Origin: Haliotis rufescens
Lineage: Eukaryota
NCBI RefSeq assembly: GCF_023055435.1
Contig: NW_025963779.1
Coordinates: forward strand, 80,910,001-80,974,000
Length of the DNA: 64,000 bases
Reading direction: 5' to 3'
Shown here: positions 1 to 42,600 of the stretch, in pieces
Numbering within the stretch: the stretch's first letter is position 1
Layout: each line of letters starts with the position of its first letter
Program-made: the position numbers and the translations under genes
The notes under the pieces: generated by a model
Databases searched by the model: none
Told to the model about the DNA's origin: nothing
Seen by the model: only the letters and a program-made list of their open reading frames with translations

Positions 1-13
1 GGACTTGAACAAG

Positions 14-1129
14 ATGTTCCAAGAGAAGTTTCGGTTCTATGCCAGACCGGTGCTGGCATTTACAACAGCAGCCGCAGTTCTTCTACTGTTGTATGTTAAG
101 GGACCTAGACTAAACAATAATTATTGGAAGACACAGGGACCTTGTATTACCAGTCTGAACACAAAGATGGATAACATTCAACATTCAGTTGGTGAGTTGT
201 CTGTGGATATAAAATCACACCAGAACAAGGTACCAGCTCGAGTTCCAAGTCCAGTTCCAGCGAAACCTACGCCAAGACAAGCAGTTCAAGCTCTGCCCTT
301 TAAGAAGAAGATTCCATGGCAGGGGATTGCGTACAAAAGAACAAATGGATCATGGGTAGCAGACGACAGTATGTGTACAGAAGACGAAGTGTTTGATCAG
401 GCGACTCTCAAAACACCCGCTGGAAATACGCCCATCTTCATCCACGATGTCGTCAAAGATCACTCGGTCTCTAAATACTTGAAGACTGTTGGCAACTGGG
501 AGCCGGATGTCATGTACACTGCTTTTGAAGCACTGAAAGATAATAAAGATCACGTGTTTGTCGACGTCGGAGGCAATATTGGAACATTCAGTCTTGCTGC
601 TGCTAAACTGGGGCACAGGGTCATCTCTGTTGAGCCCTATGCTATGAACACCAAACGCCTGTGCCGAGGAGTGGTAAAAGGTGGGTTTGCTGGACAGATG
701 TTTGTCATTCACAATGCAATGTCTGAACTCCGAGAAACGCTTTCATTTAAGCTCCACCCTAATGATATTGCAATGACCCGTGTTGAGAAAGTTACTAACT
801 CAACTTCAAACACAGATACCGTAACTTCCATACAGATGAACGATCTTCTGGAGCTGTTTGACATGAAGTCAGCTGTTATAAAGCTGGACTGTGAGGACCA
901 CGAAGTGGAGGTGATGAAGGGTGCAGAGATTTTTTTTCAAAAAGTCGATGTACGCATGGTGCTGATAGAATGGGATAAACTTATTGTAAACCAGGGAACA
1001 CTGTATATCATAGAAATGATGAAGAGATTTAATTTCAAACCATACAACCTCGGGAAAAACGCAAAAGCCTTGGATATGTCTGAGTATACTCGATGGAAAA
1101 ATAGGAACGTTGTGTTTAAGAAAGTATAA
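14..1129 (+). CDS. FkbM-family (Methyltransf_21) SAM-dependent methyltransferase, type II membrane topology, paralog 1
   Basis: ATG at 14 (ORF track starts at TTG 5). N-terminal hydrophobic anchor (VLAFTTAAAVLLLLYV), coiled/Pro-rich stem, then FkbM motifs FVDVGGNIG, VISVEP, IHNAMS, IKLDCEDHE, VLIEW. No intron in the CDS. Confidence 0.9.
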   Translation: MFQEKFRFYARPVLAFTTAAAVLLLLYVKGPRLNNNYWKTQGPCITSLNTKMDNIQHSVGELSVDIKSHQNKVPARVPSPVPAKPTPRQAVQALPFKKKIPWQGIAYKRTNGSWVADDSMCTEDEVFDQATLKTPAGNTPIFIHDVVKDHSVSKYLKTVGNWEPDVMYTAFEALKDNKDHVFVDVGGNIGTFSLAAAKLGHRVISVEPYAMNTKRLCRGVVKGGFAGQMFVIHNAMSELRETLSFKLHPNDIAMTRVEKVTNSTSNTDTVTSIQMNDLLELFDMKSAVIKLDCEDHEVEVMKGAEIFFQKVDVRMVLIEWDKLIVNQGTLYIIEMMKRFNFKPYNLGKNAKALDMSEYTRWKNRNVVFKKV

Positions 1130-1451
1130 ACTCAACTGGAATGTGAATGAAGACAGATTGTATATGCGCGCCATTAGTGATGTCATTTGATTGTGACGTC
1201 ATGGTAACAATGACGTCACAATGGTCTGCAAAGCATTGTGATGCAATTTCATCTTTGATCTCACCCAAGCGATATCTCCTGTGGGAGCCAGTTTTGGATG
1301 ATAATATATGATGCTGTACATGTTGTATATAAGATGTTGTATGAGAGTGTACATGTTGTATGTGAGATACTGTATGCAATTTATTGTGTAATATATTTTG
1401 AAATGTATGAATAAAAGCTACTTCCGTTAACATTTGTCCTATTGTAATTAA

Positions 1452-1614
1452 GGCAGGTAGGGTAGCCTGGTAGTTAAAGCGTTCGCTCGTCACGCTGAAG
1501 ACCCAGGTACGATTCCCCACATGGGTACAATGTGTGAAGCCCATTTCTGGTGTTCCCCGCCGTGATATTGTTGGAATATTGCTAAAAGCGGCGTAAAACC
1601 ATACTCACTCACTC
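1452..1614 (+). mobile_element. tRNA-derived SINE, family A
   Basis: A-box-like ggtagcctggtagttaaagcg, B-box-like ggtacgattcc, shared tail ggaatattgctaaaagcggcgtaaaac and (ACTC)n; several copies in the window. Confidence 0.85.
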
Positions 1615-1925
1615 CTAATTTGTGCAGTTTTTGGGTGCAATATTTGCATAGTTCAGATCATGGAGACGTATCGGGAGGCGTTTTCAGCAGACGTTAAGAT
1701 CTTTGTACATTTCTTCTCTTCCATATTTGAGAGAATATTATTATGGGTATCTGTTCTTGTACTTCAGCAAAATATTGAGAAGATGAATCTCCGCAGATAT
1801 CTCACAATTAAGTTGTGTGTAGCTTGCATGACCTACGATTTTATCCAGTGGGGCTCAATGACACTCATTCGACCAGGTCACACATCACAACTACCTCAAA
1901 ACCCATCAGTCGCCTCTTAACACAA

Positions 1926-2192
1926 ACCCGTGAGATCCGGGGTAGAATAGGTCCTCAGCAACCAATGCTTGTCGTAAAAGGCGACTATGCTTGTCGTAAG
2001 GGGCGATTAACCGGATCGGGTGGTCAGGCTCACTGACTTGGCTAATGCATGTCATCGTATCCCAATTGCGTGCATCGATGCTCATGATGTCAATCACTGG
2101 ATTGTCTGGTCCAGACTCGATTATTTACAGACCACCGTCATGAAGCTGGAATATTGCGGAGTGCCGCGTTAAACAACATACAAACAAACAAA
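1926..2192 (+). mobile_element. SINE-like repeat, family C
   Basis: acccgtgagatccggggtagaataggtc...gcttgtcgtaa..ggcga...ctggaatattgc...(AAAC)n; many copies in the window. Confidence 0.85.
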
Positions 2193-2439
2193 TACATGTA
2201 TGTGGTGTTGGGGGACCTATTCTTACCACATCTTTGATATTATGGAACAGTGTAAATCCATGGTAATGCCAACACTGCTTGCTCTAGTTGTTGGTAATTG
2301 ATGGTATTCCGTTCAATCGTTCGTCCCGATATGGTGGAAAATACGTGGTAATCCCGGCATTTGGCACCATGGGAATCAAGAATATCTCAGATATGTTGAG
2401 ACAACATTCAGTCATCGTCCAACAGTGTGTCTTTGTCTT

Positions 2440-3515
2440 GGTAACCCACGTTTATCCCGTTATACTGGAACAGTCGTCCATGGTAACCCAGGGATATCCA
2501 GATATACTGGAACAGTAGTCCATGATAACGCACGTTTATCCCGTTATACTCGGAAATCCGATGGATATCCATTTATACAGGAACAGTCGTCCATAGTAAC
2601 CCAGGGATATCCAGATATACTGGAACAGAAGTCCATCATAACCCACGTTTATCCCGTTATACTGGGAAATCCCATGGATATCCAGATATACTGGAACAGT
2701 CGTCCATGGTAGCCCAGGGATATCCCGATGTACTGGAACAGAGGTCCATGGTAACCCATGGATATCCCGATATACTGGAACAGAGGTCTTGGTAATTAAT
2801 GGATGTCCCGATATACTGGAACAGTAGACAATGGTAACCGAGGGATATCCCGATATACTGGAACAGTAGTCCACGGTAACCATGGTATATCCCGATATAC
2901 TGGAACAGTAGTCCACGGTAACCATGGGATATCCCGATATACTGGAACAGTAGTCCACGGTAACCCGTGGCTATCCCGATATACTGGAACAGTAGTCAAT
3001 GGTAACCCAGGGATATCCCGATATACTGGAACAGTAGTCCACGGTAACCCGTGGCTATCCCGATATACTGGAACAGTAGTCCACGGTAAACCAGGGATAT
3101 CCCGATATACTGAAACAGTAGTCCACGGTAACCCGTGGCTATCCCGATATATTGGAACAGTGGTCCATGGTAACCATGGGAGATCCCGATATACTGAAAC
3201 AGTAGTCCACGCTAACCCGTGGCTATCCCGATATACTTGAACAGTAGTCCATGGTAACCCAGGGATATCCCGATATACTGGAACAGTAGTCCACGGTAAC
3301 CCGAGGCTATCCCGATATACTGGAACAGTAGTCCATGGTAACCCAGGGATATCCCGATATACTGGAACAGTAGTCCACGGTAACCCGTGGCTATCCCGAT
3401 ATACTGGAACAGTAGTCCATGGTAACCCGTGGCTATCCCGATATACTGGAACAGTAGTCCATAGTAACCCAGGGATATCCTGATATACTGGAACAGTAGT
3501 CCATGGAAACCCAGA
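2440..3515. repeat. 42-bp minisatellite, about 25 copies
   Basis: Unit gatatactggaacagtagtccacggtaacccgtggctatccc; 14-aa periodicity in the ORF track. Confidence 0.95.
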
Positions 3516-3831
3516 TGAATTTTACCCTTTTCGAAGAGGATCAGATAACGGACTCTTTACAATTAATCGGTCTTATTACATGAACACGAGGTCAATATGT
3601 CCTCCCCCTAACAGTCATAGAGCTGTCTTAAATACTTTGTACAAATATGGTACCGATCTTAATTATAAAATAACATGTCATATCATTAAATCACTGGCTG
3701 ATCAATACAGTGAATTTAGTGTAGAATAATTGTGTTAAACTGATTAATCGAAACATTCATGTTCAGTTGAAATGAAAGCAAACATATTATAGGTTTTATG
3801 AAAGTTCATTGACAAACTGTTTATTCCAGGA

Positions 3832-3936
3832 AACTTGTTTATTTTACAAGAACCTCATGTTATAATGAAACTATTAAACGTTAAAAACGTTTAATAGTTT
3901 CATTATAACATGAGGTTCTTGTAAAATAAACAAGTT
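3832..3936. repeat. Perfect 51-bp-arm hairpin with 3-nt loop
   Basis: 3832-3882 is the exact reverse complement of 3886-3936. Confidence 0.9.
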
Positions 3937-4490
3937 CGTGCTCAAAATCATGGCATGTGTGCAGAAGAGCACCGTCTCCCCTTTGGTTTGGTACCTCCTT
4001 TTAAATGGTTGCCAAATTATCAGTAATGACTAACAGATAGTCGTCCTTCTATGTTAAATGATAAATTCTATGATAAATTTACTGCGAAGTAAAACTACCA
4101 TCATATGAAGGAAACCTTCTAGATTTTTCTGCCAAGTAATCAATCAGTATACCTAATGTGTCATTTGCCGCCATATACTTGTATATTGATAACTACCTCA
4201 TTATTCTATGGTATGTAGCCCCCCCCCCCCTCTCTCTCTCTCTCAGAAGGAGTTCTTGCTTTTTAATTGAATAGTTCATCGATATCTAAAATCATACTCT
4301 GTCTCATATGAATGATATGAATATGAGAAAATCGAAGGCCTCAGGAAAGCTATCAAATTGTTTTTATTGTAGACGTGTACGGGACACTTCCAAATTGACG
4401 CATCAAGGACAAAAATGAAATGAACAATTTAAGTGATTCACAGATATATGATAAAACAGCATCAGAATATATACAACACATGTGTTATTC

Positions 4491-5588
4491 TTATCTTTTG
4501 AACACAATGTTCCTTATATTCCATTGATTGTATTCAGAGATATTCAAAGGCTTTGCGTCCTTGCCAATTGTATATGGTTTAAATTTGAATCGTTCCATCA
4601 TTTCTATTATATATGGTGTTTCTGGGTTTTTGTAAAGTTTGTCCCATTCAATAATCACCATGCGCACATCGACAACCTTGAAGAAAATCTCGGCACCTTT
4701 CATCACATCTACTTCATGGTCCTCACAGTCCATCTTCAAAACAGCTGACTTGATGTCAAACATCTCCAACAGATCGTTCATCTGAATGGTCGTTACCGCA
4801 TCGCTGCTTGGTTTGGTGTTAGTTGCTTTGACAATGCGTGTCATTGCAGCCTCCTTTGGGAAGACTTTAAATGAAATTGTTTCCCGCACGTATGACATTG
4901 CATTATATATGACAAACATCTGTCCAGCAAACCCACCTTTTACCACTCCTCGGCACAGGCGTTTAGTGTTCATAGCATAGGGCTCAACAGAGATGACCCT
5001 GTGCCCCAGTTTAGCAGCAGCAAGACTGAATGTTCCAATATTGCCTCCGACGTCGACAAACACGTGATCTTTATTTTCTTTCAGTGCTTCAAAAGCAGTG
5101 TACATGACTTCCGGCTCCCAATTACCAACAGCCTTCAGGCGTTTAGAGACTGAGCGATCTACGACGACATCGTGGATGAAGATGGGCGTATTTCCAGCGG
5201 GTGTTTTGAGAGTCGCCCGATCAAACACTTCGTCTTCTGTACACACACTGTCATCTGCTACCCATGATCCGTTTGTTCTTCTGTACGCAATCCCCTGCCA
5301 TGGGATCTTCTTCTTAAAGGGTTGTGCTTGAAGCGACGGTTTGGTCCTCACTTCAACTTGGGGCTGTATCTCATTCTCCCTCTCTTTGATGTCCCAAGAC
5401 AACTCACTGATGGCGTTTTGAATGTTACCCAGTTTTATGTGCAGGTTATTAACAGAGGACAACTCTGTCCTGGGAATATTAGCGACAAAATTCGATCCTT
5501 TGAAATATACAACTGTGAGAACTGTTGCAACTATCATTGTTAACACCAGCACAAGTCGAGTACAGGGTGGGTTCCAGCGCAAAGACAT
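4491..5588 (-). CDS. FkbM-family (Methyltransf_21) methyltransferase, type II membrane topology, paralog 2
   Basis: 365-aa ORF with TM segment (LVLVLTMIVATVLTVVYF) and the same FkbM motifs (FVDVGGNIG, VEP, LKMDCEDHE, IIEW); clear paralog of 14-1129, arranged tail-to-tail. Confidence 0.9.
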   Translation of the reverse strand: MSLRWNPPCTRLVLVLTMIVATVLTVVYFKGSNFVANIPRTELSSVNNLHIKLGNIQNAISELSWDIKERENEIQPQVEVRTKPSLQAQPFKKKIPWQGIAYRRTNGSWVADDSVCTEDEVFDRATLKTPAGNTPIFIHDVVVDRSVSKRLKAVGNWEPEVMYTAFEALKENKDHVFVDVGGNIGTFSLAAAKLGHRVISVEPYAMNTKRLCRGVVKGGFAGQMFVIYNAMSYVRETISFKVFPKEAAMTRIVKATNTKPSSDAVTTIQMNDLLEMFDIKSAVLKMDCEDHEVDVMKGAEIFFKVVDVRMVIIEWDKLYKNPETPYIIEMMERFKFKPYTIGKDAKPLNISEYNQWNIRNIVFKR

Positions 5589-6149
5589 TTTGTTTTAATC
5601 AAATGTCTAAGAATGTCAGATTACACGTAATAACCGAGGTAATATTTCCCCCTGCTTCTGCTCGAAGCTCTCGGCACGGAGTGTGGTTATTCACAGTCCA
5701 CTGTCATACACGAAGATATTTTACACAGAACGAAAACTCAGATTTTACATGTCTGAAACCTATGCAAACGGGATGGGATATGTGATTACGCTGTTGACAC
5801 TCAAATTGTTTGGAAGGCTACAACATGATAAACATAGTCATTACTGTTACAGCATGTACTCATAGCATTTTCATAAAACCCGAGGCGTATTTACGTGATA
5901 ATTACAACAAATATCACTATCTGAAAATAGCATTATGCAAATACTGCGCATACTGTTACAAATTCAATTTGGCGAGGTTAAATTTTACATTGAAAACAGT
6001 ATGTTTTTATCTCCTAAATATTTGCATAAATTAAATCACATATTTGAGGCCATTTAATTCAGTTTTGAAAGTGTGAAAAACTTACTTTTATCTTTCTAAG
6101 TGCATCATTTCAGCACAATATCTTGTAAAACGGGAATATGACCCAAAAA

Positions 6150-11870: not shown

Positions 11871-11901
11871 TCTTTATTCGTTATGCATTTTGAAGTAGTT
11901 T

Positions 11902-12380
11902 ACACCCAACGACCAGCTCGCCCAAAAACACCCAACGACCAGCTCACCCAAACACACACAACGACCAGCTCGCCCAAACGCACCCAACGACCAGCTCGCC
12001 CAAACACACCCAACGACCAGCTCGCCCAAACACACCCAACGACCAGCTCGCCCAAACACACCCAACGACCAGCTCGCCCAAACACACCCAACGACCAGCT
12101 CGCCCAAACACACCCAACGACCAGCTCGCCCAAACACACCCAACGACCAGCTCGCCCAAACACACCCAACGACCAGCTCGCCCAAACACACCCAACCACC
12201 AGCTCGCCCAAACACACCCAACGACCAGCTCGCCCAAACACACCCAACGACCAGCTCGCCTAAACACACCCAACGACCAGCTCGCCCAAACACACCCAAC
12301 GACCAGCTCGCCCAAACACACCCAACGACCAGCTCGCCCAAACACACCCAACGACCAGCTCGCAACAAACACACCAAACG
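11902..12380. repeat. 26-bp minisatellite, about 18 copies
   Basis: Unit cacacccaacgaccagctcgcccaaa, highly homogeneous. Confidence 0.95.
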
Positions 12381-12610
12381 AAAACTGATACCACCAGTCA
12401 CGTGGGACGAGAAGTTCGTGTCCCAACACAAAGTATAAACAGTTGCAAATATGGCAACAAAGAAAGCCAGCATTTTATGATGACAGTAATTCTAACCTAC
12501 CTTGATGATACTATATCCAGTTGAACACTAAAATTAACACACGACTGACCTCCCCGACAGTCTAAAGTGGTCTCCCATTTGTCCCTCTTTCGGGTTGTCG
12601 TATATCACCT

Positions 12611-16649: not shown

Positions 16650-18109
16650 TTACAGGTTTGCATCACTTTGCGGAAGGGAGAGGATAGCGGTTTTTCCAGA
16701 GGCTTGCCCACCGCCTGCTGGGACTTTCAACACTATAGATATTTGGTTTTGCAGTTGACTGGCATCAGCTGGGCTGTTGACTTCAGATGCATTTCCAGAC
16801 AAAGATTTCATAACGTCTGGAGACAGCAAACTTCGGAGGGGTTTGGCAGGTTCAGCTAAACAATTGGAGGCTTGGTTCATTGGTAAGGTGGATGGAAGCT
16901 GTATCACTTGGAAAAGCGGGGAGGAAGCCGACAACATAGGAAGATGAGTCTTGGTTTCAAAGCTGACAGGGATTTCCTGTGATTGCATGATCTTATTGTC
17001 TATTTGTGTTGCTAGATCAAGTGTATCAATGGACTCGGTAGACTTTGACATTGGAGACTTAATCTGACACAGATTATCTACACTTTCAGATCTCAACCCT
17101 AAGCCAACACTTCTGAAAGGATTGGTCTTTACATTTGTAAAGTTCTCGGATATATCTGACAAAATCTGCTCGGCACCTTCAGTCATCTGAAGGCTGGTTT
17201 CTGGAGAGTCCAGATAAGGAATCTTTCCCTTATGGACATCATGAAATTTATTCAGGTCGAGTACAGGCCCTGCTGAGGTATCCAAGCGGACATTCCTGGT
17301 TACAAACAGACTGTTAGAATCCTCTGAATGAAAGCTCTGGGGAACGGTATCTGTATCTAGAGGAAAGGATGGGTCACTGCACAGATTGAACCCACCGCCC
17401 ATGATAGAGATGTCTTCCAGGTCATCGGGGCTTCCTTGGGGCAGGGATGAGATCCTAGATTCACACAGAAGGCCTTCTTCCTCCACAATGCCTGCATGAA
17501 GAGCTGCTGGTGCAGTGGCAGCTTCCACAGCCTCATCCTCTACTTCTTCCTCTTGTTCTTCCTCACCATCCCCGTTAAGGCGGATCACTTTTACATCAAT
17601 TTTATGAACATCTGGATTGAGATAATCTTTGACATCAAACTTAAGGCAGTTCTCAACTTTGATCACTTTGGCAACATTTTGAACATGCTTCTGGGAACAG
17701 TGCCTTTTGACTTTGTTGGACAAATTGCTTCTGTAAGGACACAGACTGCATTTGTAGGGTTTGATGCCTTCATGGGCCATGAGATGCATGGACAGTCCAC
17801 TATAGTAAGCTGTCTTGAAATCGCAACGATTACAAGCATATCTCTTGTGGTCAATGTGTTTGCCGTAGATGTGCTTCACAACAACATATCTGGATGTTCC
17901 CTTGTATGAGCAATCGGGACACTTGAACAGCTTCTTGCCATTGTGGATCAAACAATGGCGTTTGAAGCTGCCTGTCTCTATGGTCTTGTAGCCACAAATC
18001 TCACAAACATACCTTGTTATTCCCTGGTGTTTAGCTTTATGAAGGCCTAGTGCCTTTTCAAACTTGGTCATGAACTTGCACTGACCATAGTCACAAAACA
18101 GCAGTTCTC
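16650..18109 (-). CDS. C2H2 zinc-finger protein, last coding exon
   Basis: Acceptor tttcag|ga (phase 1, completes the HTGE linker); five C2H2 fingers, acidic tract, low-complexity C-terminus; stop at 16650. Confidence 0.88.
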
Positions 18110-18449
18110 CTGAAAGCAAACCAGAAAACTCTAAACATTTCTTATGTTAGGACTTTGCCTTTAAACGAGACTCCCTGAGACTCCAAATTTAACATTATTT
18201 CACTGTGCATTGTTTCTAGTTTGTAATTTCAATATATGTATAGATAAAATTTGATGCCTCTGAGTCTAATTTTGGATGAAATATCTTTAGTGAATTAAAG
18301 AAAAAGATCTGTGAAAAAGAAATAAAAGTATTTTGTAACATCATTTAGGACGATACTGGGTGCAAATAGTGATTACATAAACAGTTTTTGATCTTCTTAT
18401 GATCATTATATTTACAAGAGGTTGAAACAATGTGCCAAGACATAGGCCA

Positions 18450-19312
18450 GAGTGGTGGGGCTGGGTGGTGGGGCTGTGTGGTTGGGCTGTGTGGTGGGGC
18501 TGGGTGGTGGGGCAGGGTTGTGGGGCTGTGTGGTGGGGCTGGGTGGTGGGGCAGGGTGGTTGGGCTGTGTGGTGGGGCTGTGGGGGGCTGTGTGGTTGGG
18601 CTGTGTGGTGGGGCAGGGTGTTGGGGCTGGGTGGTTGGGCTGGGTGGTGGGGCAGGGTGTTGGGGCAGGGTGTTGGGGCTGGGTGGTTGGTCAGGGTGGT
18701 GGGGCTGGGTGGTGGGGCAGGGTGTTGGGGCTGGGTGGTTGGGCTGGGTGGTGGGACTTGGTTGTGGGGCAGGGTGGTAGGGCTGGGTGGTTGGGCTGGG
18801 TGGTTGGGCTGGGTGGTTGGTCAGGGTGGTGGGGCTGGGTGGTGGGGCTGTGTGGTGGGGCAGGGTGGTGGGGCTGGGTGGTGGGGCTGTGTTGTGGGGC
18901 AGGGTGGTAGGGCTGGGTGGTTGGGCTGGGTGGTTGGGCTGGGTGGTTGGTCAGAGTGGTGGGGCTGGGTGGTCGGGCTGTGTGGTCGGGCAGGGTGGTG
19001 GGTCTGGGTGGTGGGGCTGTGTTGTGGGGCAGGGTGGTAGGGCTGGGTGGTGGGGCTGGGTGGTGGGGCTGGGTGGTGGGTCAGGGTGGTGGGGCTGGGT
19101 GGTGGGGCTGGGTGGTGGGGCTGTGTTGTGTGGTAGGGCTGGGTGGTGGGGCTGTGTGGTTGGGCTGGGTGGTGGGGCTGTGTGGTGGGGCTGGGTGTGG
19201 CTGGGTGGTGGGGCTGTGTGGTTGGGCTGGGTGGTGGGGCTGGGTGGTGGGGCAGGGTGGTTGGGCAGGACTGTGCAGCAGGGTTCTGATGTTGCTTGGT
19301 GGGGCAGGGGCA
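18450..19312. repeat. G-rich 13-bp minisatellite (gggctgggtggtg variants), intronic
   Basis: About 860 bp of GGG-run repeats. Confidence 0.95.
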
Positions 19313-19527: not shown

Positions 19528-20682
19528 CTGTAAGTGAAAAAAAAGAATAAGTAGGCCATAAGAGGTGTCTAAATGGATTGGGTGGTCAGGTTCAATGACT
19601 TGGATAACTGCATGGTCCAGACTTGATTCACAGACCATGTCATGCATCTGAAATATTGAAACAAACAAGCAGCCAGTAATTCTTACTTTACTACGCGGAC
19701 ACTTTCAAAATCACTTTTTCCCATTTTCAGGAATGACACTGTCATGATTGTGTGGAATATTCCTCATGTCCAGTTTTAAAATGAGTGAGTGAGTTAAAAT
19801 TTAATGTCACATCGGCATTATTTCAGCCATGTAGCGACAGTTTCATAACGAAAAGTCTAAGATGTAAATGTCACACACATTTTACAGAAGTAACTTGACC
19901 AAAACGGTGGCCAAAGGTTGTATGTATTTGCCTCAACAGTTGTCAGTTAGTGAACACAAGTTGCCAGGTTGCTGTGGTGAAATATTTCACATTTTAAGAT
20001 GAAAAACCTACTTTGTTGTAGAAAGGTAAATGTTCTGTGGGAAATAATGATGCGCAATAGTTTTCAAGAAGACTTTTTACATCTAGAACTTGATGGAGTG
20101 AGTGAGTTTGGCTTAATGTTGCATTCAACGGCATTTCTGTCATAACATGGTGTCCGCTTCATATGGGAGTGATGCAGGAATTAGATCTGTCCTGCTATCC
20201 ACTAGCGGAGACAATTCACTGTGCAGGGTTGCATTTCCTAGGCACGTCAGAATCCTGTTAACATACCCCAATGATATGAATCCTTGGCAGTGATCGACAT
20301 TAAGAATAAATGTGAAGGTGTCCTTGTCATAATCCTAATACCAAAGTGGGGGTCCCCCGACTCAAATACCTCCGGGAAACATCACAGGCCCCATTACCCA
20401 CTTAATTACCAACACTGCTTGGTCCTGTTTCAAGTCACCGATTTCTGGTCTGACTTAGTCTGCGACTGAGTATTATTCACAGGCTGACTTAGGCTAAGAA
20501 CAAAAATAAGATCTTGGTTCTCAGGCACCGCCGCATCTTCATAAAGTTTGTCGCTGAGACCTACACAACTTAGGGCTTTCCTCCCACATTAAGCTTAAAG
20601 GTTGTGATATACCTGGAATCCTGTTCGAAGTGGCATTAAAACAAACTCACTCATTGTAAAACAAGTATTTCAAAGATTTTAC

Positions 20683-21550
20683 CATTATGTTTCTTGGCAC
20701 TGTGTCTGGTGAGACTGGACTTGTTCTTGAATCTCCTGGGGCAGTGTTCACACAGGAAGTTGGGCTGTGCATGCTTGCTCTTGTGCACCTGCAGCTGGCT
20801 GCGCCAAATTGTGCTGAAGTCACACTGGTCACACTGCAGCACATCTCCATTGTTGTGTGCCCGAATGTGTCTCTTCATAAACCCCAGATAGTTCGATTCA
20901 TGGCTGCACAGCCTACACCTATACACAGTGTGATTGTCCTTCACAAATTCATCCCAATGACACTCATCCACTGCATCTTCGGTTTCGAGGACAGTCTTGC
21001 AACTTTCCTCTTCATCCGTAATGCAAGCATCAATCTGATTATCATCTTTTGAAAAGATGTTTTCAGTTTCTTGAACAAAACTTTTATACATAGTTTCAGC
21101 CTCTTGCTCTGCCTCCGAGAGAGTTAACTGCCTGTTGTCGACATCATTCCCCAGAACATCTAACCGAACATCAGCCATGTCCATATTTGGAGAGTCAATA
21201 TTTGGAGCATCTTTGTCTTCAACAGTGTAATCCTGAGATCTAGTTCTTCCTAAAATATGAACATTGTTCGTTTTATGTAATGAACTTGAAGTTGAAGGAT
21301 CGTGAATTTCATGTTTCCCTTGTTTTAGAACAGTGTCGTCAACTTCAGACATGGAGAAATCAGAAACGAGTTCGATATCTTTGCTGAAAAGTTGTAGAAA
21401 CATATCTCTGGGGCATGCAAACAGCTGACATGACGAGGTCTGACGGTTGCCGTCACAGATGGCGGCATGGTGTGCATACGTCTCCTGGGTGCAGAGCAAG
21501 CCGTCACATCGGGGGCAGCCCAGGTACATGACTGGAGCAGCCGGTATCAT
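20683..21550 (-). CDS. C2H2 zinc-finger protein, first coding exon
   Basis: Acceptor ttgctag| at 21563, ATG at 21550, N-terminal CPRC..H..C motif, three C2H2 fingers, donor |gtaaaa after 20683. Joined CDS is 2421 nt (806 aa). Confidence 0.8.
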
Positions 21551-22116
21551 GATTGTGATGTACCTAGCAACAATAAGTAAACAATAACATAACGAGGGAT
21601 AAATACTCTCAATAGTAATTAATTGTTGTAAGCTGTAACTGAAAATATTGTCTTCTATAATATGATAATTTAGCATAAGGATTCACTAGCTCGGAATGTC
21701 ACAAATGGGTGAAAAACAATTATGAGAGACCTTTTCCTTTACGAGTCTTCTTGGTTTAGTTAACACGGGAAGGGAAGCATGGTACACGTATAACCCTTCG
21801 GCATGTAGTTTTTCTTGTATTTCATTCTTTCTTATTTCATCAATCATCCAAATATCAATACTGACAAGAGATTCCTTTTGAAAAAAACATGTTTTAAAAT
21901 TTTATTTTAATTATCATATTTCGACCACCATATTGTTATATACAAATTATAAAAATCTGTAAACTTAGCAATTGAAATATAGAGGCCTTATGTACTACTA
22001 CTACTACTACTTATGTACTAAATTACTCAAGATAAAATGTAAAATCTATGTAAACATGAAAAACCCAAAGTAGAGTCAATTGTAGAAAAAGTGATACCCC
22101 AGTTGTCATATCATCG

Positions 22117-33600: not shown

Positions 33601-36600
33601 GCAGGAAGATTTCCAGCCAATGTCGTATGGTTTCAAAATGGCTGCTGAGGTGACAGATGCTCGCACGTCTGGTATGATGAAGGAGGTGGAGGAGGATGTA
33701 AACAGACTTATCAAGGTAATGAGGAACATCGGACATTGTGCAAGAGAAGCGATAGAAGCAAATCAAAAGAAATGATGCTTGTTTGTATGCTGTGTTGACA
33801 AGGCAGATCAGAAGTACTTTATTCAAGTTTGACATTATTTCTTCACAAAAGAATCAGTTTAGCCATTTTGTTCTGTCTGTCATGGGAATACATGTATAGC
33901 TATCAATTATAGCGTGTTTTGAGAGTATGTTGTTAGGATGTTACCTTTGTTATGTATGTGGTTATTTTTGAGTGGTTGTGGTCTAGAGAAGTTAGAGTTG
34001 TGTCCCTTAGCTGCAAGGCTATTTCGGTTGTTGATTGAAATCAAGCTTGTCGTGGGAACACACAAATATGTACCGTATATGACCCCTAATAAGCCGAATT
34101 TTGAGGACCAGAAAAAAGATTCTGTAGAAAGGGGTCGGCTTATCCACGGGACACACTTTCACGATAGTATTTTTCAGATCGTGATCCGACAGAAACATCG
34201 CCTGAATGACGGTCCGATAGATTACAACCCGAAAGTTTGGAATCAAGTTAAAATTATCAATAAAGTTATTATTATACACCAATTTGTCATTAATAAAGTT
34301 ATTATTATACACCAATGTTGTCATTATTAAAAAAATGTTATGCATATTACTACTTACGATAATAAGATTTCAATTGTTTCCAAGTTTATCGTTCTTCATA
34401 AACTCCACAATCTTTACATCTAACAATATATAATTCACAGATGAAATCGCCATAGCTACTACAGGTAGGTACGTTTTGCAAAAATCAAAAATTGATAGTG
34501 AACAAGTATCTACCTTTATTGAAAGGGGCAAATAAACAACTGTAGCGGCGAGTTATTCCGTTCGCCATTTGCAAAAACATGTGATCAGCTGTTTCCTGTG
34601 ACGTCACAGATGGTGACCACTGTGATTGCTTCCTGTTGTTTAAAAAGCAACACGGTACACAAGGAAATGAGCACTGATAATAACGGGCCGATTGGTATTG
34701 TTATGTTGTTTACACAAACACTTTCAAGTTGTGTGTGCTTACCGATCGTGTTGGGAGTAGGGGCTTAATTCTTTTGTTTTCGAGAGATTAGTTTAATAAA
34801 CTGGAGAAGCCTGTGAGTAAGTGATGGTCATTTAATTTAATTTTGTTGTTTTCGAGAGATTAGTTTAATAAACTGGAGAAGCCTGTGAGTAAGTGATGGT
34901 CATTTAATTTGTTCATAGTTTATTTAATTCAATTGGATTAACATACGATAGTGGCGGCAATGTTTGAAGTTGAATTGAAGTAAATTGGTGAGTTACTGCA
35001 TAGGTGTATAGAAGTTGGAATATTTTTATTGACTGGCAATCTCATCATGAGTTCAAAACGAAAACGCCACGCTTACGATGCTGCATTCAAACTGCGGGTC
35101 GTCTCTGTTGCTGAGTCGACAAACAACAGTGCGGCTGCACGACAGTTCGACATCAACGAGAGGCAAGTTAGAAATTGGAGGAAAGAAAAGACGGCACTAA
35201 CAGAAATGCCGAAAACCAAGAAAGCTAGACGGTTTGCTGTAACACCATACAGTAAACTAGAGGATGTCCTGTATGAGTGGATAACAGAACAAAGACAGTC
35301 TGGTTACATGGTAACCAGAAATATGATTCGCCAACGGGCATTGACGGTTTACAAGGCGAAGAAACAGGAATTCGACCTCCCAACAACGTTTAAGGCATCG
35401 TCACACTGGTGTTCAAGGTTTATGAACAGGAGACACCTTACTCTCAGACAGAAGACCCACATCGCCCAGAAGCTGCCTGACCAGGAAAACACAAAAGTGG
35501 ACTTGTTTCATGCCCTTGTCATCAAAGGACGGAAGGCTATGGCCTATGAACTTGGTCAAATCGGCAACATGGACGAGACCCCTTTGAACTTCGATATGCC
35601 AGGCTCCAGAACAGTAGACCACCTGGGTGCCAAGACCATATCGGTGAAGACAACGGGGAACGAGAAACAACATTTTACTGTTGTTTTAACGTGTTTGGCA
35701 GATGGGACGAAACTAAAACCTATGGTTGTTTTCAAAAGAAAGACAATGCCCAAAGACAAGTTTCCGGCTGGAGTTGTTGTCGCAGTACACCAGAAAGGTT
35801 GGATGGACGAAGACCTAGTTAACAGATGGGTAACAGATGTTTGGATGTCCTGGCCGGGTGGCATGAGGGGATGCAAGTCTTTACTTGTATGGGATATGTT
35901 TAGAGCACACCTGTGCCAGAGTGTCAAGAAGAAGTTAACTGAAACAAAGACACACCAAGCAGTAATACCAGGCGGATGTACCTCCCTTCTCCAGCCCCTT
36001 GATGTATGCTTAAACAAGCCATTCAAGACCAACAGTTTATCCCCTGTTGTATGTTTCTGTATGATAAATGTTGTATATTTGTTGTATAAGTGTTGTATAA
36101 CTTTTGTATTCCTCCCCAGATGACCCGCAGTAAGCCCGGCGAAGAGAGAGACTCAGCCACAGAGCATGAGGTAATCTTCAGTATTGCCCAGTATTGTCGA
36201 ATGTATTATCTTTTCTAACACATGTGCAACAATGTTATTCACAAAGCTGATTGGTCAGTTGGAAGTACAAGAAAGCACACATTGTTCGTCACATCACAGT
36301 TGACCAGATTCACATGGGAGTTACCATATAACTTGGGATTTGCTGGCAGGCACAAGATGGGTGTATTATTGTCACACAAACATATATCACAGGAAATAAT
36401 TCTTTGGGAAATTGCAAGCTTGTACTGATAAATTCATTGCATGTGACACCCTTGATCTTTGGCCTGGAGATGTACAATTTCATACAATACATAAATTCCC
36501 ATACACTGCTGTTGAGACACGTAACTCATGGTAAGGCCGTGAAACTGACAGGGAAAACACACTGCTCCATGTGAGCAGGAGTATGGTCACAGGGTTAAAT

Positions 36601-39600: not shown

Positions 39601-42600
39601 TTTGTCAGCACCATATCTGTTCTTGTGGGTTTCAATGAAGGGGTAAAAGTCTGAGACCTGCATCACTTCAGGCTTTCCTCCCACATTAAGCTGACATGCC
39701 ATGATGTAACAGGAATATTGTTCAAAGTGGCATTAGACCCAATCCACCCCACCCCATTATCCACTCCACTCCACTCCACTCCACTCCACTCCACTCCACT
39801 CCACTCCACTCCACTCCACTCTTATTACGTACAGTTCATATGTGTTGAAGTATGGCATCCACGGTGCCAGGATGAATGTTTAGCTTCATTCACAGGGTAC
39901 TTTTGTTGAAATGCCAATTCCTTTTAACACTAGGCAGCCCTGTTGCCAACAGATTGATTGCTTCATTTGCTATTGTGTTTGTAGGGTTCTGCTGAGGCTA
40001 GCATGCCTGAGAACAAAGACAGAAGTTACTTTAGCCTTCCAGGGGAGTGAATGATAGTTTCTACAGTAGAGATGTACAGTTCTCTGTTTTACCTTCAGGA
40101 GACCTTCATCGAGTTCAGCAAGTCTGGTCCCTGTGTCTTGGCAAGGTCAATACTTCAGGTAGGTTCTCTCTACACTGTAGACGCTGATGGTATGGCAAGG
40201 CAGATGAGGTCCCAATATACCCCCTGATGTGTTGTACAAGAAGACTGTTATATTAAAATATGTTATATAAAATGGTCGGGATGGGGCAGACCAATTGTCA
40301 TATCCTGAAAACAACTTTAACTTTATCACTCCAAACTGTGAAGAACATGATGCAGTTTCTGTGAGTATTTACAGACCACCATGATACCTCCTACATCATC
40401 ATGTGACTTATATGTGGGCCCGTGAAGATCCGGGTCAGATTAGGTCTTCAGCAACCCAACCGACTAACAGGATCGAGTGGTCAGGCTTGCTGACTTGTTT
40501 GATGCATGTCATCTTATCCCAATTGCGTGGATCAAGCTCATGACATCAATCACTGGATTGACTTATCCAGACTCGATTATTTACAGACCGGCATCATAAA
40601 GCTGGAATTTTGCTGACTATGGCATTCAAAATCAAGCAAACAAACAAACAAACAAACATGTCTGTGTAACAAAGCTTCAAACGTTCAAATAATAAGTATT
40701 CTTCTAACATGTCAAAGCTCCAGTCAAACAGGTTTTCGCTGTGTAACTAATTCTAACTAATTGATGAGGACACCATTATTCCCTGTGATATGTGATAAGA
40801 GTTTGGTAAATGTTTATTAGTGTTTGTGATCTGACCTCTCTCTGCTGACAGCAAACCCTCCTGCCTGCCAACCGTCGTATCTTTGGGATTCATCCTGTCA
40901 TAGACTTCATGAAGGATACAATCAGGAACTTCATAGCACCGCCTGCTTTGTCTCAAAAGTAAGCAAGACTCGCCACACTATGATCTGTTTGTCAGCACCA
41001 TATCATGGGATAGACATCATGAGAATAATTCAACTAAATTACCAGGTAACAGAAAGTATTCACCCATGTTTAATGGCGACTGCAAATGAAACAAACAAGA
41101 AATGGTTATTCAATGGGGATGTATTTGATACGGGAATTAGAGGCTCGTACATGCATCATATCAGTAAGTATCTCACACCAAGTCAGTCCAGTAACGTTTT
41201 GATAACTTTTGTAATGGTTTAGTCAAATCCAAGTTTCAGGTGTGTTTCTTTTGCCTAGCAGTTTAATCCACAGCTCAATTCAGACTACTGGTTTACATGA
41301 TTGTGTACCATGGTAGCCAGAAAACAACTAATCCTTCCAGATTTTCACTGGTCTCAGACTAGTGGACTAGTGGCCATGTCTGTCCCTGATATTACCAGAC
41401 ATGGTGAACGCCCAAGTCCTATGTCATTTTGAGCTTTCTCCTACATTAGGCTGACATGATATGAAAAGTTAACTGAAATACTCTTGAATGTGGCGTAAAA
41501 AAACAAACAACTTATCATCAGTTGATAGCTATGGTTTGGAATGTGCTAAACTTTTTCCCAAAAAAATGTTTCCCATAGTTAGTTCTCTGAGTTTAGCTGT
41601 CAGTCACATGGAACTGATGAAGACAATCTTTGATCTAGGACATCTTAGATCAAGGACATCCTAGATCAAGGACATGCTAGATCAAGGACATCTTTGATTG
41701 AGGACATCTTAGATCAAGGACATCTTTGATGTAGGATACTTTGATGTAGGATATCTTAAATCAAGGACATCTTTTGATTGAGGACATCTTGGATCAAGGA
41801 CATCTTTGATCTAGGATACTTTGATAAAGGATATCTTAGATCAAGGAGGTCTTAGATCAAGGACGTCTTAGATCAAGGACATCTTTGATTGAGGACATAT
41901 TGAATCAAGGACATCTTTGATCTACGATACTTTGATATGGGATATCTTAAATCAAGGAGGTCTTAGATCAAGGACATCTTTGATTGAGGACATCTTAGAT
42001 CAAGGACATCTTTGATCTAGGATACTTTGATAAAGGATATATCTTTGATCAAGAAGGTCTTAGATCATGTAGATCAGTGACGTCTTAGATCAATGACTTC
42101 CTAGATCAAGGACAGCTCAGATCAAGGACATGATGGATCTAGGATTCAAGTGAGTGTTCATGTCTCAGGTGCAGCCTGTACAACAACCCACAAGCCAAGG
42201 AGTACGTGGATGCCCTGCTGACGCATGCTGTGCGGCCCATCTGCACCTTGTTCCAGATTACCGGACACAACCGAGCCCGGCAGAGAGACAAGTGGGCACA
42301 TGTTCTGGAGGATCTGGCCCTGCTGCAGGAGGAGGTGAGTGGCAAGAGGATTGTTGGGGAGAGAGCTGTTTTATTTTTTCTTATCCTGACTCATACGCAT
42401 GAGCAATAAGTATGAGTCAGGATATGTATAAAATATGTTTTTTACTAAAAAAAAATACATATATACATACACATGGTATACTGTATTGTGTTATATACTC
42501 ATGGTATTCTGCCCTAATTTGTCTATGTACCAAATCACATTCTAAGTATAAGTCATATTTACCACTGATAAACACGAATTTGTGCAAAGGAAAACTTTTA

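What the first reader, a model, noticed from the sequence alone, without database searches (positions are those of the whole stretch)
14..5588. Duplicated membrane-anchored FkbM methyltransferases as candidate Golgi glycan O-methyltransferases
Seen: both proteins have a short N-tail, one TM segment, a stem and a C-terminal FkbM catalytic domain, the layout of Golgi glycosyltransferases. Known: FkbM/Methyltransf_21 enzymes are O-methyltransferases (e.g. rhizobial NoeI methylates fucose), and gastropod glycans carry O-methylated mannose and galactose. I know of no assigned animal enzyme for that modification. Inference: this pair may belong to a luminal glycan-methylation system. The usual KxDxEG motif reads KLDCED/KMDCED in both copies, suggesting a distinct subfamily.
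Basis: partly seen in the sequence, partly recalled or inferred. Interest (0 to 1): 0.75.

Follow-up and report, generated by a model that had tools for sequence, protein, structure and literature searches.

The report
Abalone membrane-anchored FkbM methyltransferase gene pair
Two neighbouring abalone genes encode membrane-anchored enzymes of a methyl-transferring family whose working part should face the inside of the secretory pathway, which makes them untested candidates for the still-unidentified animal enzymes that methylate sugar chains.

Summary
Window 1-1129 (+) and 4491-5588 (-) hold two intact, intron-free, convergent ORFs of 376/371 and 365 aa. Each has a short N-tail, one hydrophobic anchor, a helical and proline-rich stem, and a C-terminal FkbM domain. 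PF05050 scores 39.8 and 39.9 bits against a cut-off of 22.7. TIGR01444 scores 62 and 65 bits against 37.7. Contigs of small, transcriptome-like runs cover each gene co-linearly. dN/dS between the genes is 0.32.

They are not an isolated pair. The same abalone genome has at least 29 intact single-ORF paralogues. A profile of the family finds 769 cluster representatives at E<=1e-30. Every animal among the named ones is a mollusc, and all are labelled 'uncharacterized'. SAM-binding residues are invariant across the family.

The KLDCED/KMDCED variant is real, but it marks only a Haliotis-restricted clade. The 'G' position varies in half of the family.

The glycan O-methyltransferase role is plausible. 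The catalytic domain is predicted to be lumenal, abalone haemocyanin is rich in 3-O-methyl sugars, the genome has MFS_5 (SAMT1-type) genes, and passages from 2019-2023 papers say such enzymes remain unidentified. No tool here tested it.

In passing: a 413-nt gene-conversion tract joins the two copies.

Verdict: new members of a known enzyme family and a useful, unproven lead.

The parts
1..1129 (+). Gene 1, single-exon CDS of an FkbM-family methyltransferase. It is 376 aa if the ATG straddling the left window edge is used and 371 aa from the ATG at 14. Stop at 1127-1129.
   Evidence: ORF. Upstream in-frame ATG. 98% identical 376-aa H. cracherodii protein. A 1253-nt contig of run X1 lies co-linearly on 1-1199 with 1 other letter.
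47..97 (+). Gene 1 hydrophobic segment PVLAFTTAAAVLLLLYV, the predicted signal anchor
   Evidence: Best Kyte-Doolittle 19-mer 1.82. It lies inside AF2 helix 4-33. The crude charge count for this copy is ambiguous, +2 on the N side and +3 on the C side.
149..328 (+). Gene 1 stem: predicted helix (residues 51-72 of the 376-aa form), then a proline-rich, low-confidence linker (73-110)
   Evidence: AF2 secondary structure and pLDDT 37-63 in these blocks
329..1126 (+). Gene 1 catalytic domain (residues 111-376): a beta-rich N-terminal part plus a class I Rossmann methyltransferase core. The Pfam PF05050 match maps to about 563-1036.
   Evidence: Motif I is VDVGGNIG, the acidic residue after strand 2 lies in ISVEP, and the K-x-D-x-E-x-x-E motif reads KLDCEDHE.
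4491..5588 (-). Gene 2, single-exon CDS, 365 aa, convergent with gene 1. The Pfam PF05050 match maps to about 4578-5054.
   Evidence: ORF. Pfam and NCBIfam. 96% identical over 316 tree columns to H. cracherodii P0003. Contigs of runs X4 and X5 cover 4350-5672 and 4460-5672 with small gaps.
5502..5555 (-). Gene 2 hydrophobic segment LVLVLTMIVATVLTVVYF, the predicted signal anchor
   Evidence: Best Kyte-Doolittle 19-mer 2.32. Net charge is +2 on the N side and +1 on the C side.
4363..4368 (-). AATAAA hexamer downstream of gene 2. The X4 contig ends 13 nt beyond it, at 4350.
   Evidence: Sequence read and contig table. Contigs cannot prove an RNA end.
296..708 (+). Gene-conversion tract, gene 1 side (partner at 4909-5321)
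   Evidence: The tract is 413 nt at 95.4% identity, against 67.6% outside. 0 of 2000 shuffles reach the segment score. Third-codon-position identity is 87-97% in codon columns 121-240.
4909..5321 (-). Gene-conversion tract, gene 2 side
   Evidence: The wider inverted repeat 285-1119 / 4498-5332 is 85% complementary.
1140..4362 (.). Intergenic spacer between the convergent genes. It holds high-copy interspersed repeats (about 1140-1710 and 1900-2280), a 42-bp satellite (2453-3514) and a 51-nt perfect palindrome (3832-3936).

Best explanation
Shown: two transcribed, intron-free, convergent paralogous genes in an abalone (Haliotis) chromosome. Each encodes a protein with a short N-terminal tail, one N-terminal hydrophobic anchor, a helical and proline-rich stem, and a C-terminal class I SAM-dependent methyltransferase domain of the FkbM family (PF05050/TIGR01444). 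The cofactor-binding motifs are intact. The genes belong to a large mollusc-wide family with at least 29 intact copies in this genome, and both are under purifying selection.

Inferred: the anchor inserts the protein as a type II membrane protein, so the catalytic domain faces the lumen of the ER/Golgi. There it uses S-adenosylmethionine, imported by an MFS_5 (SAMT1/GoSAMT-type) carrier, to O-methylate hydroxyl groups of sugars on N-glycans, O-glycans or other glycoconjugates. The many paralogues would supply different sugar, position or acceptor specificities.
For: - Family and fold. Pfam and NCBIfam scores are above their cut-offs. 17 of 18 aligned own-genome paralogues match PF05050. The AF2 catalytic domain mostly has pLDDT >= 90. 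In BFVD the best structural matches are FkbM proteins: the top hit is Fadolivirus 'Methyltransferase FkbM' (E 4.4e-14, TMt 0.74), and 21 of the 50 rows listed carry FkbM in their name. The solved FkbM structure 2py6 is rank 2 by Foldseek and scores Z 12.5 by VIA-align.
- Catalytic competence. Across 140 family representatives the motif I Asp is kept in 140, its two Gly in 139 and 140, and the acidic residue after strand 2 (D/E) in 140. In the K-x-D-x-E-x-x-E motif, K is kept in 139, D in 137, the first E in 131 and the last E in 139. Both window genes keep all of these. dN/dS is 0.32 overall and 0.26 in the catalytic part.
- Topology. One N-terminal hydrophobic 19-mer is found in 27 of 29 own-genome paralogues. 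The N side is more positive in 25 of those 27. The same segment is found in 109 of 145 representatives that start with Met. The lumenal part has conserved Cys126 and Cys222 and a conserved NGS sequon.
- Expression. Contigs lie co-linearly on gene 1 (X1) and gene 2 (X4, X5). These three runs have zero depth over the non-repeat intergenic bins, while the DNA-like run X13 covers 29 of 30 bins.
- Substrate context. Methylated hexoses are reported in Haliotis haemocyanin (PMC8699351 passage). Two MFS_5 loci exist in this genome, one an open 458-aa frame scoring 270 bits. That family is the proposed Golgi SAM carrier (bioRxiv 10.1101/2021.07.06.451061 passages).
- Open question. Animal and algal glycan O-methyltransferases are described as unidentified.
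- Recalled, from no call: characterised bacterial FkbM-family members include the sugar O-methyltransferases NoeI and RfbT.
Against: - No assay, localisation or acceptor evidence exists, so the function rests on family membership and architecture.
- Similarity to any characterised enzyme is remote. Sequence hits in PDB are only weak (best E 6e-05, to an arginine methyltransferase, over the cofactor motif; FkbM 2py6 E 0.069). tblastn against 72,556 plasmids found nothing at E <= 1e-3. PF05575 RfbT is below its cut-off.
- By VIA-align the fold ties with many unrelated class I methyltransferases at Z about 13.
- For gene 1 my crude charge count does not favour either orientation. No dedicated signal-peptide or topology predictor was available.
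- MFS_5 carriers also occur in humans (passage). I recall that humans lack methylated glycans. So the presence of the carrier here is only permissive.
- PANTHER files Methyltransf_21 animal proteins under 'Protein Star' (table in PMC12403961). As I recall, Drosophila Star works as a cargo chaperone and has no known methyltransferase activity.
- The run types are guesses ('RNA?'), and contigs show neither strand nor level.
Confidence: 0.5

Rival explanations
1. A lumenal or secreted FkbM methyltransferase that acts on a non-glycan acceptor, such as a small metabolite, a lipid or a protein side chain of the secretory pathway or shell/mucus matrix.
For: FkbM itself methylates a macrolide (recalled). 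The family's acceptor range is wide. No sequence feature here identifies a sugar-binding site. The RfbT model is below its cut-off. The fold ties with catechol, caffeoyl-CoA and tRNA methyltransferases.
Against: I recall no other lumenal methylation in animals. Methylated sugars are abundant in molluscs. The family is expanded in an annelid together with carbohydrate sulfotransferases and glycosyltransferases (table in PMC12403961).
Confidence: 0.2
2. A non-catalytic, Star-like type II membrane protein, for example a cargo receptor or chaperone, that only keeps the FkbM fold.
For: PANTHER PTHR34009 'Protein Star' is labelled with Pfam Methyltransf_21. Star is a type II membrane protein (recalled). 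One paralogue in this genome, L025, has lost motif I and the K-x-D-x-E motif, and its H. asinina counterpart P0055 matched neither motif pattern. So pseudo-enzymes may exist in the family.
Against: Both window genes keep every invariant cofactor-motif residue of the family. The catalytic part is the most constrained, with dN/dS 0.26. A direct comparison with Star could not be made because no Star sequence was available from any tool.
Confidence: 0.1
3. A glycan or polysaccharide methyltransferase that works outside the Golgi: ER-resident, on the cell surface, or shed after cleavage in the stem.
For: Only an N-terminal hydrophobic segment is shown. Residence cannot be read from the sequence. 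The proline-rich, disordered stem could be a cleavage or O-glycosylation region.
Against: Extracellular SAM supply is unlikely (general knowledge). The anchors are short, 17-18 residues, which I recall as typical of Golgi rather than plasma-membrane proteins.
Confidence: 0.15
4. Bacterial contamination or a very recent horizontal transfer, not a resident animal gene.
For: The coding sequences have no introns. FkbM is mostly a bacterial and viral family: 62 distant loci were found in viral contigs, and bacterial clusters appear among the atlas hits.
Against: The genes lie in a 94-Mb contig among animal repeats and transposons. Orthologues exist in H. cracherodii and H. asinina on contigs of about 89 Mb. 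At least 29 paralogues are spread over many contigs. Relatives are found across gastropods and bivalves.
Confidence: 0.02

Closest known systems
FkbM-family SAM-dependent methyltransferases (Pfam PF05050 Methyltransf_21; TIGR01444). Recalled examples: FkbM of FK506/FK520 biosynthesis, rhizobial NoeI (2-O-methylation of Nod-factor fucose) and Vibrio cholerae RfbT (O-antigen methylation).
   Same: The domain matches are above the curated cut-offs. The fold is class I Rossmann, with motif I D-x-G-x-x-x-G, an acidic residue after strand 2 and K-x-D-x-E-x-x-E. The best structural neighbours among viral models are FkbM proteins.
   Different: These are eukaryotic proteins with an N-terminal membrane anchor and stem. 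There is an extra conserved beta-rich segment before the Rossmann core (C..F....LKTPAG.TPI.IHD...D..VS). The motif reads KLDCED/KMDCED. Pairwise similarity to bacterial members is too low for tblastn, and RfbT is below its cut-off.
Type II Golgi glycan-modifying enzymes of animals and plants (glycosyltransferases, carbohydrate sulfotransferases, plant Golgi polysaccharide methyltransferases)
   Same: The cytoplasmic tail, transmembrane anchor, stem and lumenal catalytic domain follow the same layout. The coding sequence is a single exon, and the family is large and lineage-specific.
   Different: The catalytic domain is neither a glycosyltransferase nor a sulfotransferase. It also belongs to a different methyltransferase family from the plant enzymes (recalled). 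Golgi residence has not been tested.
Chlorovirus PBCV-1 N-glycan O-methyltransferases A064R domain 3 and A061L
   Same: They are class I SAM-dependent methyltransferases shown in vitro to methylate a terminal sugar (rhamnose) of an N-glycan in a eukaryotic setting (PMC9614988 passages).
   Different: They are viral, with soluble or fused domains, and act on rhamnose. The passages seen do not call them FkbM-type. Neither protein is named among the 50 rows listed.
Drosophila Star / PANTHER PTHR34009 'Protein Star'
   Same: An animal type II membrane protein family labelled with Pfam Methyltransf_21 (for the label; topology recalled).
   Different: Star is known as an ER-export factor for EGFR ligands, not as an enzyme (recalled). 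The abalone proteins keep all the cofactor motifs.

Membership tests
FkbM family (PF05050 / TIGR01444) | Profile match above the curated cut-off | tested here: met
   PF05050 scores 39.8 and 39.9 bits against 22.7. TIGR01444 scores 62.2 and 64.6 bits against 37.7. 17 of 18 paralogues match PF05050.
FkbM family (PF05050 / TIGR01444) | Class I Rossmann-type methyltransferase fold | tested here: met
   AF2 model. VIA-align Z 12-13 to many class I methyltransferases, including FkbM 2py6 at Z 12.5. BFVD top hits are FkbM proteins, with E down to 4.4e-14.
FkbM family (PF05050 / TIGR01444) | SAM-binding motif I (D-x-G-x-x-x-G) and an acidic residue after strand 2 | tested here: met
   VDVGGNIG and ISVEP in both genes. 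These positions are kept in 139-140 of 140 representatives.
   K, D, E and the last E are kept. G is replaced by D, and V/I by C. G is present in only 69 of 140 family representatives, so it is not defining for this animal family.
FkbM family (PF05050 / TIGR01444) | SAM-dependent methyl transfer | not testable with these tools
   Needs an enzyme assay.
Sugar O-methyltransferases of the RfbT type (PF05575) | Profile match above the curated cut-off | tested here: not met
   Gene 1 scores 16.4 bits against a cut-off of 27.9. Gene 2 has no hit at E <= 0.1. 1 of 18 paralogues hits at E <= 0.01.
Type II Golgi glycan-modifying enzymes (layout class) | Short N-tail, a single N-terminal signal anchor, a stem and a C-terminal catalytic domain | tested here: met
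   This rests on hydropathy and AF2 only, with no dedicated topology predictor.
Type II Golgi glycan-modifying enzymes (layout class) | N-in/C-out orientation (positive-inside rule) | tested here: inconclusive
   Gene 2 has +2 on the N side and +1 on the C side. Gene 1 has +2 and +3. Among the 27 own-genome paralogues with an anchor, 25 have the more positive N side.
Type II Golgi glycan-modifying enzymes (layout class) | Golgi residence and action on glycans | not testable with these tools
   Needs localisation and glycomics.
Drosophila Star / PTHR34009 | Sequence membership in the Star family | not tested
   No Star sequence or PANTHER model was available. Only the PANTHER label in PMC12403961 was seen.

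The most novel reading that the evidence does not exclude
This mollusc-wide family of anchored, lumen-facing FkbM proteins is the long-missing set of animal glycan O-methyltransferases. Its roughly 30-fold expansion in abalone encodes the sugar- and position-specific methylation (3-O-Me-Man, 3-O-Me-Gal and others) that makes mollusc glycans distinctive and a target of innate-immune lectins. The two window genes, which differ mainly outside a shared converted core, would be a pair with different acceptor specificities.
Probability: 0.45. Interest if true: 0.8.

Novelty: new member of a known kind. Interest (0 to 1): 0.55.

Why it matters
O-methylated sugars are a hallmark of mollusc, nematode and algal glycans. 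They are epitopes for innate-immune lectins and antibodies. In the passages I could read, the eukaryotic enzymes that make them are still called unidentified: C. elegans in 2019 and 2023, Chlorella in 2019.

A family with exactly the expected layout gives a concrete, clonable candidate list. The members have a lumen-facing SAM methyltransferase on a Golgi-type anchor, are expanded in a methyl-glycan-rich animal, are transcribed and are under selection. Confirming even one member would open up three things:
- the enzymology of glycan methylation in animals;
- knock-outs that ask what the modification is for;
- engineering of methylation in or out of recombinant glycoproteins such as haemocyanin-based adjuvants.

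If the proteins turn out to be inactive or to use another acceptor, they remain an uncharacterised expanded gene family.

Tried and rejected
- Word-indexed protein search. With gene 1, and with an 18-paralogue alignment, it returned only 5 and 10 proteins. This was too insensitive for a taxon survey, so the third search was not spent.
- Sequence search of PDB. It gave only weak cofactor-motif hits.
- Foldseek and VIA-align against PDB. They gave a broad tie among class I methyltransferases and cannot assign specificity.
- tblastn against plasmids, meant to reach rhizobial noeI-type genes. No match.
- The search for related loci in genome contigs with alignment A1.
- The viral scan. It gave 62 distant loci at 21-44% identity. 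I did not analyse their neighbourhoods because they are too remote to bear on the abalone genes.
- Synteny of the pair in other Haliotis species.
- Literature. Ten paper searches found no paper that assigns a function to an animal FkbM-domain protein. One search was badly ranked and uninformative. Staudacher 2012 (PMC3795332) and Wohlschlager 2014 (PMC4103367) are not held. Subscription literature and theses were not searchable, and supplements were closed, so candidate lists there may already name such genes. All papers cited were seen as search listings and passages only, never in full.
- Contamination or recent horizontal transfer. Rejected (see the rival explanations).
- A simple recent tandem duplication. 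Rejected in favour of old paralogues plus gene conversion.
- Earlier scan notes. They held nothing on this locus.

Full report
WHAT IS THERE

The window is part of a 94-Mb contig of a 1.33-Gb assembly. The best protein matches are 'uncharacterized' Haliotis proteins. They are 98% identical to H. cracherodii and 80% to H. asinina, so this is an abalone genome.

Two intact ORFs sit tail to tail. Gene 1 is on + and ends at 1129. Gene 2 is on - at 5588..4491. Gene 1's ATG at 14 is preceded, in frame, by an ATG that straddles the window's left edge. That start gives 376 aa, the length of the H. cracherodii orthologue.

No intron interrupts either coding sequence. A 1253-nt contig of run X1 lies co-linearly on 1-1199 with one differing letter. 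Contigs of X4 and X5 tile 4350-5672 and 4460-5672.

X1, X4 and X5 are small contig sets. They have zero depth over the non-repeat intergenic bins (1711-1900 and 2281-4180), whereas X13 covers 29 of 30 bins. So they behave like transcriptomes, although the tool only guesses 'RNA?'. Contigs prove neither strand, ends nor level.

Gene 1 was seen only in X1 and gene 2 only in X4 and X5. Absence from contigs is not proof of silence.

An AATAAA at 4368-4363 (- strand) lies 13 nt before the end of the X4 contig.

PROTEIN ANATOMY

Both proteins match PF05050 (39.8 and 39.9 bits, cut-off 22.7) and TIGR01444 (62.2 and 64.6 bits, cut-off 37.7) in their C-terminal halves.

Each has one strongly hydrophobic stretch near the N-terminus, with Kyte-Doolittle 19-mer means of 1.82 and 2.32.

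AlphaFold2 was run on an 18-paralogue alignment (pLDDT 81, pTM 0.72). It predicts:
- a long N-terminal helix at 4-33 that contains the anchor;
- a second helix at 51-72;
- a low-confidence proline-rich linker at 73-110;
- a confident domain at 111-376, mostly pLDDT >= 90.

The domain is a class I Rossmann methyltransferase. VIA-align gives Z 12-13 to many such enzymes, with the solved FkbM structure 2py6 at Z 12.5 and the highest identity, 18%. Foldseek ranks 2py6 second.

Among predicted viral structures the top hits are specifically FkbM proteins. The best has E 4.4e-14 and TMt 0.74, and 21 of the 50 rows listed carry FkbM in their name.

Sequence-level similarity to solved or plasmid-borne enzymes is very weak or absent. 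The RfbT sugar-methyltransferase model is below its cut-off.

A FAMILY, NOT A PAIR

A six-frame search of the same genome gave 33 matches at E <= 0.001.
- Of the 30 loci fetched, 29 carry an open single frame of 291-602 aa and one is a fragment.
- 27 of those 29 have an N-terminal hydrophobic 19-mer. In 25 of the 27 the N side is the more positive.
- 17 of 18 aligned paralogues match PF05050.
- Copies occur in tandem on contig C90 (four full copies 3.5-5 kb apart) and as a triplet on C112.

A profile of the alignment, searched against 1.84 billion cluster representatives, found 72,028 proteins at E <= 1e-3, 12,485 at E <= 1e-10 and 769 at E <= 1e-30. The best 150 all score above 227 bits.

I looked up 30 of these representatives, and 12 carried an organism name:
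- 11 are molluscs (Haliotis, Gigantopelta, Patella, Bulinus, Crassostrea, Pecten, Pinctada, Mytilus);
- one is an ichthyosporean on a long branch.

All are 'uncharacterized', 'hypothetical' or 'FkbM domain-containing'. The feature-based atlas adds rotifer, diatom and bacterial clusters as near neighbours.

A FastTree of 176 domain sequences was built (local support only, with several long branches). It puts the two window genes, the C112 triplet and the four Haliotis proteins P0001-P0004 in one clade. That clade has 100% support and sits on a long stem of 0.88. Each window gene pairs with its H. cracherodii orthologue. So the clade is genus-restricted as far as sampled, and the two genes separated before those species did.

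MOTIFS

Across 140 representatives, conservation is as follows.

| Position | Kept in (of 140) |
|---|---|
| Motif I Asp | 140 |
| Motif I Gly (first, second) | 139, 140 |
| Acidic residue after strand 2 (D/E) | 140 |
| K of K-x-D-x-E-x-x-E | 139 |
| D | 137 |
| First E | 131 |
| Last E | 139 |

Both window genes keep all of these.
The others include T 21, S 18, E 10, K 8 and N 4.
- Position 4 is I or V in 135 and Cys in none.
- KLDCED/KMDCED is therefore a private signature of the Haliotis clade. Only the Cys is unusual.
- One paralogue, L025, has lost motif I and the K-x-D-x-E motif. Its H. asinina counterpart P0055 matched neither motif pattern. It may be a pseudo-enzyme.

SELECTION AND MOSAIC HISTORY

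dN/dS between the two genes is 0.32 (0.26 in the catalytic part), so both are constrained. The often-quoted 70% identity is an average of two very different regions.
- A 413-nt segment (296-708 in gene 1, 4909-5321 in gene 2) is 95.4% identical. The rest is 67.6% identical.
- Inside the segment each gene is about 83% identical to the C112 paralogue.
- Outside it, gene 2 is closer to the C112 paralogue (77.1%) than to gene 1.
- 0 of 2000 shuffles reach the observed segment score.

This is a gene-conversion tract between the inverted copies. It covers the beta-rich N-terminal part of the domain and the SAM-binding half. The H. cracherodii pair shows the same mosaic, 92% inside and 53% outside, so the event predates that species split.

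HOW IT MOST LIKELY WORKS

Shown: a membrane-anchored protein carries an intact, conserved, transcribed FkbM-type SAM methyltransferase domain.

Inferred:
- The anchor places the domain in the lumen of the secretory pathway.
- The short anchor, helical stem and proline-rich linker match the tail-anchor-stem layout of Golgi glycan-modifying enzymes.
- SAM would be supplied by an MFS_5 carrier. Two such loci exist in this genome. That family is the proposed Golgi SAM transporter in C. elegans and Arabidopsis (passages). Because humans also have one, this is only permissive.
- The acceptor would be a sugar hydroxyl.

The arguments for a sugar acceptor are:
- methylation of sugars occurs on Fuc, Gal and Man in invertebrates (PMC6272458 passage);
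- no other lumenal methylation is known to me in animals (recalled);
- bacterial FkbM members include sugar O-methyltransferases (recalled);
- in the annelid Alvinella the Methyltransf_21 family is listed as expanded alongside carbohydrate sulfotransferases and glycosyltransferases (table passage).

I put about 0.5 on this full chain.

RIVALS

- A non-glycan acceptor: about 0.2.
- A site of action outside the Golgi: about 0.15.
- A Star-like non-enzymatic role: about 0.1. The conserved cofactor motifs count against it, and it could not be tested directly.
- Contamination or recent transfer: about 0.02. The genomic context and the orthologues contradict it.

WHAT IS KNOWN

The passages I read say that the glycan methyltransferases of C. 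elegans 'remain to be identified' or are not known (PMC7614267, 2023; PMC6422873, 2019). They also say that the Chlorella N-glycan O-methyltransferase still has to be identified (PMC6344472, 2019).

The only eukaryote-context N-glycan O-methyltransferases I found described are the chlorovirus A064R domain 3 and A061L (PMC9614988 passages).

None of my ten searches found a functional assignment for an animal FkbM-domain protein. Mentions were incidental, such as an amphioxus gene named fkbmc. Two key papers were not held. Theses, subscription journals and supplements were out of reach, so prior candidate lists cannot be excluded.

VERDICT

These genes are new members of a known enzyme family. 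Their value is as a concrete, testable lead to an open question in glycobiology. Interest 0.55.

Noticed in passing
window 296-708 and 4909-5321: A gene-conversion tract joins the two inverted FkbM genes. It is 413 nt at 95.4% identity, against 67.6% elsewhere. Outside the tract gene 2 is closer to a paralogue on another contig (L003) than to gene 1. The same mosaic is seen in the H. cracherodii proteins P0001 and P0003.
   Followed up: yes
window 2453-3514: A 42-bp satellite of about 20 copies (87% matches) with a 126-bp higher-order period lies in the spacer between the two genes. It creates spurious repeat-derived ORFs on both strands.
   Followed up: partly
window about 1140-1710 and 1900-2280: Very high-copy interspersed repeats. 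Summed contig depth is 10^5-10^7 in all four runs laid, with hundreds of loose ends at 1614 and 2059. They are probably SINE-like elements that are also present in transcripts.
   Followed up: no
window 3832-3936: A perfect palindrome with 51-nt arms that are 100% complementary and 3 nt apart.
   Followed up: no
window 35029-36123 (+): An ORF of 364 aa with DDE_1, HTH_Tnp_Tc5 and Brinker DNA-binding domains. It is a pogo/Tc5-type transposase.
   Followed up: partly
window 16650-18119 (-) and 20651-21676 (-): Two long ORFs with C2H2 zinc fingers. A 13-bp G-rich array (GTGGTGGGGCTGG, about 63 copies, 18452-19266) lies between them and explains the strong GC skew there.
   Followed up: partly
window 58321-59449; also 11902-12381, 41626-42145, 55104-55632: Further tandem arrays: 88 bp x 12.8 at 97% matches, 26 bp x 18 at 96%, and 16/95/111-bp and 57/117/231-bp arrays. 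The long ORFs at 58172-59556 and 11874-12473 are repeat-derived and have no Pfam match.
   Followed up: partly
window 43890-49021: An earlier scan note calls this a DIRS element. Here an ORF at 46576-47466 gave only a weak Phage_int_SAM_4 hit (E 5.7e-4, below the cut-off). That is compatible with a tyrosine-recombinase retroelement.
   Followed up: partly
G000:C90:28579213-28594907 (L006-L009) and G000:C112:36500649-36569442 (L003-L005): Tandem arrays of FkbM paralogues. C90 has four full copies 3.5-5 kb apart plus a fragment. C112 has a triplet in which two ORFs about 50 kb apart encode identical proteins.
   Followed up: partly
L025 (G000:C583:27133898-27134641) and P0055: This paralogue has lost the first Gly of motif I (FDIYAGVG) and the K-x-D-x-E motif (RIDMTP), yet it keeps an open 356-aa frame. 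Its tree partner P0055 (H. asinina) matched neither motif pattern. It may be a pseudo-enzyme.
   Followed up: partly
L032 (G000:C556:58152274-58153248) and G000:C135:11561826-11589303: Two MFS_5 (SAMT1/GoSAMT/MFSD5-type) loci. One is an uninterrupted 458-aa frame scoring 270 bits. The other is split over at least five exon-like pieces.
   Followed up: partly
P0011, P0012, P0013, P0014 (representative hits): Some family members carry two or three complete FkbM domains in one predicted protein (618-1139 aa). P0011 comes from short metagenome contigs without an organism name. These may be true multi-domain enzymes or fused gene models of tandem copies.
   Followed up: no
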